NCBI RefSeq assembly: GCF_006345805.1
Contig: NW_021832462.1
Span: forward strand, 1 to 30,901
Source of the DNA: Octopus sinensis
Taxonomy: Eukaryota
DNA length: 30,901 nt
Direction: 5' to 3'
Part shown: in pieces, positions 19,413 through 20,300 of the stretch
Position numbering within the stretch: the first letter of the stretch is position 1
Layout: the number at the start of each line of letters is the position of its first letter
The notes under the pieces: model-generated
Told to the model about the DNA's origin: nothing
What the model saw: only the letters and a program-made list of their open reading frames with translations
Databases searched by the model: none
Made by a program: the position numbers and the translations under genes

Positions 19413-19456
19413 GGAGATATATAGTGAGGCGCAGGCGTTGCTGTGTGGTAAGAAGC

Positions 19457-19690
19457 GGCAACACAAGCGACCCCGGAGACGCTGCCAGGAGCCCGGAAGA
19501 CCCGAGAAGAGTTCTCTCTCCTTCGCAAAGGACCGCGTTCGTGGAATCGGCTCGTCCGGAGATACGGATATGTTGCCTGTAGAGCGCCGCTTTCGGCGGC
19601 CCTGGTAAATCCGGGTCTGTAACGATTCGCACCTCTCGAGTCGGTCCGTACCCACCATCTGTAGCAGGTTTCCAAGTTATACAGCCTCTC
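19457..19690 (+). pseudogene. 28S: Diverged 28S (LSU) rRNA fragment, retroposed
   Basis: Collinear near-matches to conserved LSU blocks recalled from memory: CGG(C/T)AAC..CCCGGAGACG, GAAGAGTTCTCT, GGCCCTTGAAAATCCGGG (here GGCCCTGGTAAATCCGGG) and CCGTACCC..AGCAGGTCTCCAAGGTGAACAGCCTCT (here AGCAGGTTTCCAAGTTATACAGCCTCT). Confidence 0.85.
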
Positions 19691-19695
19691 GTCAA

Positions 19696-20110
19696 AAGGC
19701 GGTGAGCTGGCGGAGACGTTAGCACGTCGGGCGAAATGCTTTATGGTATTTCGTCTGCCGCTACGTTGTGAGTTCAAATTCCGCCGAGGTCGACTTTGCC
19801 TTTCATCCTTTCGGGGTCGATAAATTAAGTACCAGTTACGCACTGGGGTCGATGTAATCGTCTTAATACCTATGTCTGTCCTTGTTTGTCCCCTCTGTGT
19901 GTAGCCCCTTGTGGGTAATAAAGAAATAGGTAATTCGTCTGCCGTTACGTTCTGAGTTCAAATTCCGCCGAGGTCGACTTTGCCTTTCATCCTTTCGGGG
20001 TCGATTAAATAAGTACCAGTTACACACCGGGGTCGATGTAATCAACTTAATCTCTTTGTCTGTCCTTGTTTGTTTCCTCTGTGTTTAGCCCCTTGTGGGT
20101 AGTAAAGAAA
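19696..20110 (+). mobile_element. Family B SINE dimer fused behind the 28S fragment
   Basis: Head AAGGCGGTGAGCTGGC; internal junction GAAATAGGTAATTCGTCTG at about 19930. Confidence 0.94.
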
Positions 20111-20300
20111 TAAGAAGCTTGCTTCCCAACCACATGGTTCCAGGTTCAGTCCCACTGCGTGGCACCTTGGGCAAGTGTCTTCTGCTATAGTCTTGGGCTG
20201 ACCAAAGCCTTGTGAGTGGATTTGGTAGACGGAAACTGAAAGAAGCCCGTCATATATATATTTGTGTGTGTATGCCCGCGTGCGCATGTGTGTGTGTGTG

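What the first reader, a model, noticed from the sequence alone, without database searches (positions are those of the whole stretch)
19449..20118. 28S rRNA-SINE chimera retroposed as one unit into another SINE
Seen: a 654-bp insert (19457-20110) made of about 235 bp of LSU rRNA-like sequence plus a family B SINE dimer, all on the same strand, flanked by TAAGAAGC at 19449-19456 and 20111-20118 and splitting a family A SINE head. Known: LINE reverse transcriptases produce chimeric retrocopies by template switching (U6-L1 type), and 28S-derived SINEs are described in vertebrates. Inference: either a one-off template switch from SINE RNA onto 28S rRNA, or a copy of an undescribed 28S-headed chimeric SINE. 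The rRNA part differs at 4 of 27 positions in a normally near-invariant block while the SINE part looks much closer to consensus. That suggests the 28S piece was already old or came from a divergent rDNA (host variant or parasite). As I recall the LSU layout, the fragment starts a little downstream of the protostome hidden-break region.
Basis: partly seen in the sequence, partly recalled or inferred. Interest (0 to 1): 0.75.

Follow-up and report, generated by a model that had tools for sequence, protein, structure and literature searches.

The report
Old 28S rRNA–SINE chimeric retrocopy
A 654-bp insert in an octopus-type genome is a decayed, dead-on-arrival retrocopy that fuses a 237-nt piece of the host's own 28S ribosomal RNA to a two-unit SINE; it is a real but ordinary by-product of LINE reverse transcription, of a kind already catalogued in mammals.

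Summary
Window 19457-20110 is one insert flanked by the target-site duplication TAAGAAGC, and it splits a family-A SINE. It consists of a 237-nt 28S rRNA piece, two extra A's, and a family-B SINE (52-nt head plus two 184-nt units), all on the + strand.

The rRNA piece matches Rfam LSU_rRNA_eukarya (E=1.9e-7). It aligns along its whole length to genuine Octopus vulgaris 28S (E=8e-75) and carries octopod-specific states. It is therefore host-lineage rRNA, not parasite or variant rDNA.

It differs from Octopus 28S at 20/229 bases (8.7%), nearly all private changes, and has an 8-nt insertion and a 23-nt deletion. The SINE-B part is 7.0% from its consensus (29/412; p=0.44) and the interrupted SINE-A is 8.9% from its own.

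The "dimer" is the normal form of family B. Another dimer in the window has its own 15-bp duplication.

Best reading: one old retrotransposition event in which the reverse transcriptase ran off the 5' end of a SINE-B RNA and continued on 28S rRNA. RNA ligation or read-through from an rDNA-embedded SINE cannot be excluded.

Whether further copies exist could not be tested, because no octopus genome could be searched by DNA. Low interest.

The parts
19426..19456 (+). 5' part (head) of the interrupted family-A SINE; the target of the insertion
   Evidence: BLAST to 7 other A heads in the window. The head joined to the tail is colinear with the A consensus, 15/168 = 8.9% diverged.
19449..19456 (+). 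Left copy of the target-site duplication TAAGAAGC. Its last 3 nt (AGC) also match the 28S bases just upstream of the fragment, giving 5'-junction microhomology.
   Evidence: Read. 28S has GAAGCAGC|GGCAAC and the target has TAAGAAGC|.
19457..19693 (+). Decayed fragment of host-lineage (octopod) 28S rRNA, sense strand, Rfam LSU model about 1640-1888 (D7b and following core). The 5' boundary is ambiguous between 19454 and 19457.
   Evidence: Rfam E=1.9e-7. BLASTN E=8e-75 to a true LSU contig. 20/229 substitutions against O. vulgaris 28S, with octopod-specific states shared.
19493..19502 (+). 8-nt insertion relative to all cephalopod 28S sequences. It looks like a short tandem duplication of CCGGGAAGA; the exact placement is ambiguous.
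   Evidence: Alignments.
19587..19588 (+). Site of a 23-nt deletion relative to all cephalopod 28S (CGCGTCTCGGGCGGCGTCCGGTG). It removes most of a conserved hairpin and is flanked by CGC microhomology.
   Evidence: Alignments. The Rfam alignment shows the helix missing.
19694..19695 (+). Two A's at the 28S/SINE-B junction that belong to neither parent (28S continues GATAGC; B starts AAGGCGG). Probably non-templated addition.
   Evidence: Junction comparison. The B 5' end is defined by 12 heads and by the TSD-flanked dimer at 17631.
19696..19747 (+). Family-B SINE head, full length from its consensus 5' end AAGGCGG(C/T)GAGCTGG
   Evidence: BLAST and alignment with 11 other heads from the window and O. 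bimaculoides L004; 7/52 differences.
19745..20110 (+). Two tandem 184-nt family-B body units (19745-19928 and 19929-20110/12), ending in the family's 3' tail AAAGAAATA
   Evidence: TRF period 184, 2.0 copies. Units are 12/180 and 10/180 from the consensus. Other arrays in the window use the same inter-unit joint.
20111..20118 (+). Right copy of the target-site duplication TAAGAAGC (its first 2 nt, TA, could instead be the end of the B tail)
20119..20255 (+). Remainder of the interrupted family-A SINE
   Evidence: BLAST to at least 11 other A copies at 85-91%; consensus alignment.

Best explanation
A single, old target-primed reverse transcription event inserted a chimeric cDNA into a pre-existing family-A SINE. 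A LINE-encoded endonuclease/reverse transcriptase nicked the target at TAAGAAGC and primed on the 3' tail of a two-unit family-B SINE RNA. It copied that RNA to its very 5' end and added about two untemplated nucleotides. It then continued on the cell's most abundant RNA, 28S rRNA, landing at an internal position (...CAGCCUCUCGUC) and copying about 237 nt upstream. The cDNA end was joined to the other side of the break at a 3-nt microhomology (AGC). The product had no function and no means of copying its rRNA part onward, and all its parts have since decayed by about 7-9%.

Shown: single event, host-lineage 28S origin, complete SINE 5' end, equal decay of the parts.

Inferred: template switching as the joining step, and the identity of the enzyme (an unidentified, non-poly(A) LINE).
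For: - Single event. One 6-8 bp duplication flanks the composite and none flanks either part, and the restored empty site is an uninterrupted SINE-A.
- Order and orientation. The cellular RNA is 5', the retroelement is 3', and both are sense, as in known RT chimeras.
- SINE-B ends. Its 3' end is the same tail as in the independently TSD-flanked dimer at 17631-18042. Its 5' end is the exact family 5' end, seen in 12 heads from two species. This is what is expected if the enzyme ran off the end of the template.
- Junction signatures. Two extra A's lie at the junction, and there is 3-nt (6 of 7) microhomology at the 5' joint. Both are typical of end-to-end template jumps and of 5' joining in TPRT (established knowledge of R2 and L1).
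- Host origin of the rRNA piece. It has 20-21 differences to Octopus and Argonauta 28S, 27 to decapodiforms and 66 to a non-cephalopod, and it shares octopod-specific indel states.
- Equal age of the parts. rRNA 20/229, B 29/412, host A 15/168 (p=0.44 and 1.0).
- Precedent. [quoted passage not shown]
Against: - The joining step itself leaves no unique signature. RNA ligation before reverse transcription, or read-through from a SINE-B lying inside an rDNA copy, would give the same layout.
- The acceptor point is internal to 28S, whereas classical end-to-end jumps land on a 3' end. That would require an rRNA breakdown fragment or internal landing.
- The junction can also be read as 28S GATAG decayed to AAAAG, overlapping a slightly 5'-truncated SINE-B. 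This needs 2 substitutions in 4 sites (P about 0.04), so it is not excluded.
- The two indels lie only in the rRNA part (0 in 412 nt of SINE-B). This could hint at a pre-decayed source, although slippage by the enzyme on structured rRNA explains it equally well.
- The partner LINE was not identified. The LINE remnant in the window shares no tail with SINE-B.
Confidence: 0.62

Rival explanations
1. RNA-RNA ligation before reverse transcription. A 28S rRNA breakdown fragment ending at ...CUCUCGUC was ligated to the 5' end of a SINE-B RNA (as proposed for U6/LINE-1 chimeras), and the fused RNA was then retrotransposed as one template.
For: It gives the same final layout. It naturally explains an rRNA 3' end at an internal position (a cleavage product). 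The 2025 survey of 28S/LINE-1 chimeras lists ligation alongside template switching.
Against: The two extra A's at the junction are not expected from a clean ligation. A Pol III SINE transcript carries a 5' triphosphate, which is a poor ligase substrate (established knowledge, not tested here).
Confidence: 0.12
2. 5' transduction. A SINE-B copy sitting inside a 28S gene or an rDNA pseudogene was transcribed by read-through from upstream. The enzyme primed on the SINE tail and simply kept copying the contiguous upstream 28S sequence until it stopped after 237 nt.
For: It would give the same layout with an exact SINE 5' end. A decayed rDNA pseudogene as source could explain why the two indels lie only in the rRNA part.
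Against: The rRNA part is no more substituted than the SINE part (p=0.44). The O. vulgaris and Argonauta rDNA units examined are uninterrupted at this site. The SINE-B target sites seen in the window are AT-rich (TATTTATCTTACTCA, TAAGAAGC, TA repeats), unlike the GC-rich 28S site. SINE RNAs normally start at their own internal promoter (established knowledge).
Confidence: 0.12
3. The insert is one copy of a propagating composite SINE family with a 28S-derived 5' module.
For: SINEs do acquire new modules by template switching (PMC4758252 and PMC4824008), and a 28S-derived SINE exists in mammals (SINE28, PMC4994717). Copy number in the host genome could not be measured here.
Against: None of 12 other B heads in 93 kb of Octopus DNA (this window plus O. 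bimaculoides L004) carries the rRNA piece. No catalogued ORF spans the junction among 1.84 billion representatives. The SINE-B promoter-like boxes lie downstream of the rRNA piece, so its own transcripts should not include that piece (inference). The piece is internal 28S, not the 3' end used by SINE28.
Confidence: 0.08
4. The rRNA piece comes from a divergent rDNA variant or from a parasite (e.g. a dicyemid), or the whole thing is a misassembly joining rDNA reads to SINE reads.
For: There are five changes in a 40-nt block that is invariant in all cephalopods compared.
Against: The fragment shares octopod-specific substitutions and indel states in the variable stretch and is closest to Octopus and Argonauta 28S. 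Its differences are private, include a helix-destroying 23-nt deletion, and match the decay of the flanking SINEs. A misassembly would carry pristine 28S and no target-site duplication restoring a SINE-A.
Confidence: 0.02

Closest known systems
[quoted passage not shown] 2003, as cited in PMC4758252)
   Same: An internal 28S fragment a few hundred nt long (human median 269 nt; 237 nt here) is fused in sense orientation to the 5' side of a retroelement. The whole is bounded by one target-site duplication. Template switching or RNA ligation is the proposed cause.
   Different: Here the 3' partner is a SINE, not the LINE itself. The host is a cephalopod. There is no poly(A) tail or L1-type TT/AAAA site, so a different (unidentified, tail-recognising) LINE must be responsible. 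The 28S segment comes from a different region (Rfam model 1640-1888, not the human hotspot near 3636-4115).
SINE28 (Longo et al. 2015, PMC4994717)
   Same: 28S-derived sequence dispersed by retroposition.
   Different: SINE28 derives from the 3' end of 28S, is transcribed by Pol III on its own and exists as a multi-copy family. The piece here is internal 28S, is attached to another SINE, shows no evidence of further copies, and should not be included in the SINE's own transcript.
Composite or hybrid SINEs built by template switching (5S-rRNA-headed SINE3/OS-SINE type; BivaMD-SINE1; LP-SINEs; PMC4824008, PMC4758252)
   Same: The same elementary event: a SINE cDNA extended onto a second RNA, giving a new 5' module.
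   Different: Those products gained a promoter-bearing head and went on to amplify. This one gained a promoterless internal rRNA piece and looks like a dead end.
Octopus tRNA-derived SINEs OK, OR1, OR2 (Ohshima & Okada 1994, cited in PMC4758252 and PMC4824008)
   Same: Families A and B are abundant octopus SINEs. Family A contains a GGGCAAGTG...-type stretch that resembles the CORE domain reported for an octopus OR family (my recollection, not tested).
   Different: No reference sequences were available, so neither family could be assigned a published name. ARAGORN and Rfam found no tRNA in the window.

Membership tests
LINE-RT chimeric retrocopy (U6/L1-type, 28S/L1-type) | Two unrelated RNA-derived parts fused in the same orientation, with the retroelement at the 3' side | tested here: met
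   28S sense fragment 19457-19693 followed by sense SINE-B 19696-20110.
LINE-RT chimeric retrocopy (U6/L1-type, 28S/L1-type) | One target-site duplication around the composite and none around either part | tested here: met
   TAAGAAGC at both ends. The empty site restores a SINE-A. There are no direct repeats around the rRNA piece or the SINE-B alone.
LINE-RT chimeric retrocopy (U6/L1-type, 28S/L1-type) | The 5' part corresponds to mature cellular RNA, not to a genomic locus with flanks | tested here: inconclusive
   Only mature 28S sequence is present, but an internal fragment cannot distinguish rRNA from an rDNA read-through transcript.
LINE-RT chimeric retrocopy (U6/L1-type, 28S/L1-type) | L1 hallmarks: poly(A) tail and TT/AAAA cleavage site | tested here: not met
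   The insert ends in the SINE-B tail AAAGAAATA, the site is GG/TAAGAAGC, and there is no A-run. It works like the class but is not an L1 product.
SINE28 | [quoted passage not shown] | tested here: not met
   The fragment maps to LSU model 1640-1888 of 3401 and to the middle of the O. vulgaris 28S (L002 10236-10487 within 7840-13304).
SINE28 | Multiple dispersed copies; Pol III transcription | not testable with these tools
   No eukaryotic genome could be searched by DNA, and no expression data were available.
Propagating composite SINE with a 28S module | Several copies sharing the junction, each with its own target-site duplication | tested here: inconclusive
   0 of 12 other B heads in 93 kb. 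0 junction matches in JGI metagenomes, which is uninformative. No junction-spanning ORF in the protein collections.
Functional LSU rRNA gene or variant | Full-length, structure-preserving sequence reaching the Rfam gathering score | tested here: not met
   38.5 bits against a cutoff of 50. It is a 237-nt fragment, a conserved hairpin is deleted, and there are 5 changes in a block invariant across cephalopods.
Family-B SINE (multi-unit form) | Head plus tandem 184-nt units transposing as one element with its own target-site duplication | tested here: met
   The dimer 17631-18042 is flanked by a 15-bp TATTTATCTTACTCA duplication. Arrays of 2.0-3.5 units share the same inter-unit joint.

The most novel reading that the evidence does not exclude
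The junction is not unique. On this reading, octopus genomes hold a small family, or a recurrent class, of SINE-B elements carrying this internal 28S module, either propagated through read-through transcripts or re-created repeatedly at a preferred 28S acceptor site. That would point to a specific interaction between the octopus SINE/LINE machinery and the ribosome or rRNA breakdown fragments.
Probability: 0.08. Interest if true: 0.5.

Novelty: new member of a known kind. Interest (0 to 1): 0.22.

Why it matters
It is a clean, fully resolved invertebrate example of a 28S rRNA/retroelement chimera, a class so far catalogued mainly for mammalian LINE-1. It suggests that the unidentified, non-poly(A) LINE that mobilises octopus SINEs also extends cDNAs onto bystander RNAs. 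This is the elementary step by which SINEs acquire new modules. Beyond that it is a neutral, decayed insertion with no sign of function. Practically, it shows that rRNA-like hits in cephalopod assemblies can be old retrocopies rather than contamination or misassembly.

Tried and rejected
- Rfam at gathering threshold on the whole window found nothing. The permissive whole-window scan returned only microsatellite-driven miRNA noise and lost the LSU fragment to the filters. Only the 1-kb scan recovered it.
- ARAGORN found no tRNA, so the tRNA origin of families A and B stays unverified.
- A protein-word search with the frame -1 translation of the rRNA piece plus junction found nothing. The full HMMER scan of 1.84 billion representatives found only SINE-B ORFs or true 28S ORFs, none spanning the junction. 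P0005's apparent span (query 24-134) is genuine 28S sequence aligned by chance.
- Exact and degenerate junction patterns in JGI metagenome contigs gave 0 hits. This is uninformative, since octopus DNA is not expected there.
- I tried to find the window's own or orthologous locus through the LINE-tail ORF 25179-25850. No exact record exists, and the 439 homologues are generic RT tails with no orthologue. Host species, presence/absence in relatives and copy number therefore remain unknown.
- I looked for the partner LINE by comparing SINE-A and SINE-B tails with the 3' flank of that LINE remnant and found only chance 7-9-mers.
- CpG decay as an explanation for the rRNA part's changes is rejected: only 4 of 20 substitutions are CpG transitions despite 33 CpGs.
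- A multi-jump origin of the SINE-B dimer is rejected, because all arrays share the same inter-unit joint and a dimer has its own target-site duplication.

Full report
**1. What is in the sequence**

Reading window 19000-20700 shows TAAGAAGC at 19449-19456 and again at 20111-20118. The sequence to the left (19426-19456) and to the right (20119-20255) belongs to an abundant repeat, family A. BLAST finds at least 10 other copies in the window at 85-91% identity. When the 654-bp insert and one copy of the octamer are removed, the joined flanks align without a gap to the consensus of seven other A copies, with 15/168 differences. The octamer is therefore a genuine target-site duplication inside a SINE-A. 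The end of the insert (…AAAGAAATA) overlaps the first two bases of the octamer, so the duplication is 6-8 bp.

**2. The rRNA piece**

- Whole-window Rfam at gathering thresholds finds nothing.
- A permissive scan of 19300-20300 matches LSU_rRNA_eukarya at 38.5 bits, E=1.9e-7, model positions about 1640-1888 of 3401.
- To obtain real cephalopod 28S I translated the open minus-strand frame across the piece and scanned 1.84 billion representative proteins. Several hits were spurious ORFs called on rDNA.
- Their encoding contigs gave a Logan contig that is true LSU (634.7 bits) and complete rDNA units of Octopus vulgaris (OX597833.1) and Argonauta hians. They also gave 28S from the cuttlefish Acanthosepion pharaonis, two marine-metagenome decapodiform-like contigs and one non-cephalopod.
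- The window piece aligns end to end with Octopus 28S (E=8e-75).

**3. Whose rRNA, and how decayed**

Functional 28S is extremely conserved in this 252-nt stretch:

| Comparison | Differences |
|---|---|
| O. vulgaris vs the Logan contig | 0/252 |
| Argonauta vs Octopus | 5/252 |
| Decapodiforms vs Octopus | 11-12 of about 240 |
| Window fragment vs Octopus | 20/229 |
| Window fragment vs Argonauta | 21/229 |
| Window fragment vs decapodiforms | 27 (of 213-222) |
| Window fragment vs the non-cephalopod | 66/218 |

- The fragment shares octopod-specific states, such as GATATGG and the ACGA(A/T)TCGC stretch that decapodiforms lack. It is therefore host-lineage rRNA. The parasite and divergent-rDNA ideas are rejected.
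- Seventeen of its 20 differences are private. Three coincide with states in other cephalopods, which suggests only that the source 28S was not identical to today's O. vulgaris sequence.
- It also has an 8-nt insertion (about 19493-19502) and lacks 23 nt (after 19587) that form a conserved hairpin.
- Five of the changes fall in a 40-nt block invariant in all cephalopods. The piece is a pseudogene-like relic.
- Only 4 of the 20 substitutions are CpG transitions, although the segment has 33 CpGs.

**4. The SINE part**

- Family B consists of a 52-nt head beginning AAGGCGGCGAGCTGG, seen in 12 heads from this window and from 62 kb of O. bimaculoides. The head is followed by one or more 184-nt units, each ending …AAAGAAATA.
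- TRF finds arrays of 3.5, 3.5, 2.0 and 2.0 units in the window. All use the same inter-unit joint.
- The dimer at 17631-18042 is flanked by its own 15-bp duplication, TATTTATCTTACTCA.
- Multi-unit B elements therefore transpose as single RNAs, and the 'dimer' in the finding is the ordinary form of the family. It is not evidence of extra template jumps.

**5. Relative ages**

| Part | Divergence |
|---|---|
| rRNA piece vs Octopus 28S | 20/229 = 8.7% |
| SINE-B head | 7/52 |
| SINE-B unit 1 | 12/180 |
| SINE-B unit 2 | 10/180 |
| SINE-B part, total | 29/412 = 7.0% |
| Interrupted SINE-A | 15/168 = 8.9% |

- SINE divergences are measured against consensus sequences built from the other copies.
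- Fisher tests give p=0.44 (rRNA vs B) and p=1.0 (rRNA vs A).
All parts look as if they have decayed together since one old insertion.

**6. Junctions**

- At the 28S/B joint the window reads …CAGCCTCTCGTC-AA-AAGGCGGTGAGC. Real 28S continues GATAGCGCC, and B starts at AAGG. The SINE is therefore complete to its 5' end, with two bases that belong to neither parent. An alternative reading, decayed GATAG overlapping a slightly truncated B, needs two substitutions in four sites (P about 0.04).
- At the 5' joint, 28S reads GAAGCAGC|GGCAAC and the target reads TAAGAAGC|. This is a 3-nt perfect (6 of 7) microhomology.
- A complete donor 5' end, a few untemplated bases and a microhomology-mediated 5' joint are what established work on R2 and L1 leads one to expect from a reverse transcriptase that runs off one template, jumps to another, and is then resolved by the second half of target-primed reverse transcription.

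**7. Mechanism and rivals**

The best explanation (confidence about 0.6) is a one-off template switch from SINE-B RNA onto 28S rRNA within a single retrotransposition event. That it is a single-event chimeric retrocopy of host 28S plus SINE-B is much more certain (about 0.9).

- RNA ligation before reverse transcription cannot be excluded from one locus.
- Read-through from a SINE-B embedded in an rDNA copy also cannot be excluded. The examined rDNA units are uninterrupted at this site, the SINE-B targets seen here are AT-rich, and the rRNA part is not older than the SINE part.
- A propagating 28S-headed family is unlikely. The B promoter-like boxes lie downstream of the rRNA piece. None of 12 other heads in 93 kb has the piece. 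No catalogued ORF spans the junction. However, copy number in the host genome could not be measured.
- Misassembly is excluded by the decayed state of the rRNA piece and by the duplication that restores a SINE-A.

**8. Comparison with the known**

[quoted passage not shown] They belong to the wider U6/L1-type chimeric retrogenes (cited).
- The present case works like these but is not an L1 product. It has no poly(A) and no L1 cleavage motif, and its 3' partner is a SINE.
- It is not SINE28, which derives from the 3' end of 28S and is itself a Pol III-transcribed multi-copy element.
- It represents the elementary step invoked for the origin of composite SINEs, here caught as a dead end.

**9. 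Limits**

No tool here searches eukaryotic genomes by DNA. Host species, copy number, orthologous presence/absence and read support are therefore untested. The partner LINE is unidentified.

**10. Verdict**

The feature is a new member of a known kind, of low interest.

Noticed in passing
window 7068-7704 (+) and 7774-8422 (-): Two 3.5-copy arrays of the 184-nt SINE-B unit face each other across about 70 nt, forming a near-palindrome (inverted arms up to 360 nt, 92%). A weak Rfam MIR7533 hit at 7662-7840 is just this hairpin.
   Followed up: partly
window 13573-13872: A SINE-B monomer (+) truncated at its 3' side abuts an inverted SINE-B head (13787-13872, -; 86-nt arms, 88%). This looks like a twin-priming or 5'-inversion arrangement.
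   Followed up: no
window 26557-27648: A 20-nt satellite (ATAATATCCTGAGACCATGG) in 54.5 copies at 90% match. It produces long artefactual ORFs on the minus strand.
   Followed up: no
window 25179-25850: A LINE reverse-transcriptase C-terminal remnant (Pfam DUF6451; 439 RVT_1-type relatives) with an internal duplication. Its 3' flank shares nothing with the SINE-A or SINE-B tails.
   Followed up: partly
window 13191-13520: An ORF with C2H2 zinc-finger matches (zf-C2H2_4, E=6e-7) immediately upstream of a SINE-B. Its origin (LINE ORF1-like or gene fragment) is unknown.
   Followed up: no
L002 10001-10636 (O. vulgaris), L003 6001-6798 (Argonauta hians), L005 2501-3220 (Acanthosepion pharaonis): Annotated 'hypothetical protein' gene models in three cephalopod assemblies lie antisense on 28S rDNA and are almost certainly spurious.
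   Followed up: partly
L002 7840-13304 vs L003 4279-8879: The Rfam LSU span is 5465 nt in O. vulgaris but 4601 nt in Argonauta hians. The roughly 860 nt of extra length is unexplained; no SINE-B hit lies inside it.
   Followed up: no
L004 (O. bimaculoides CM046612.1), e.g. 5918-6085 and 59042-59209: Several SINE-B copies end at unit position about 119, suggesting a shorter B subfamily with a different tail. Annotated proteins P0001 and P0003 contain SINE-B-derived coding segments.
   Followed up: no
window 20887-21855: A long (TGTA)n-type microsatellite (195 copies) with extreme GC skew (+0.59). The window as a whole is dominated by microsatellites and SINEs, with no evident host gene.
   Followed up: no
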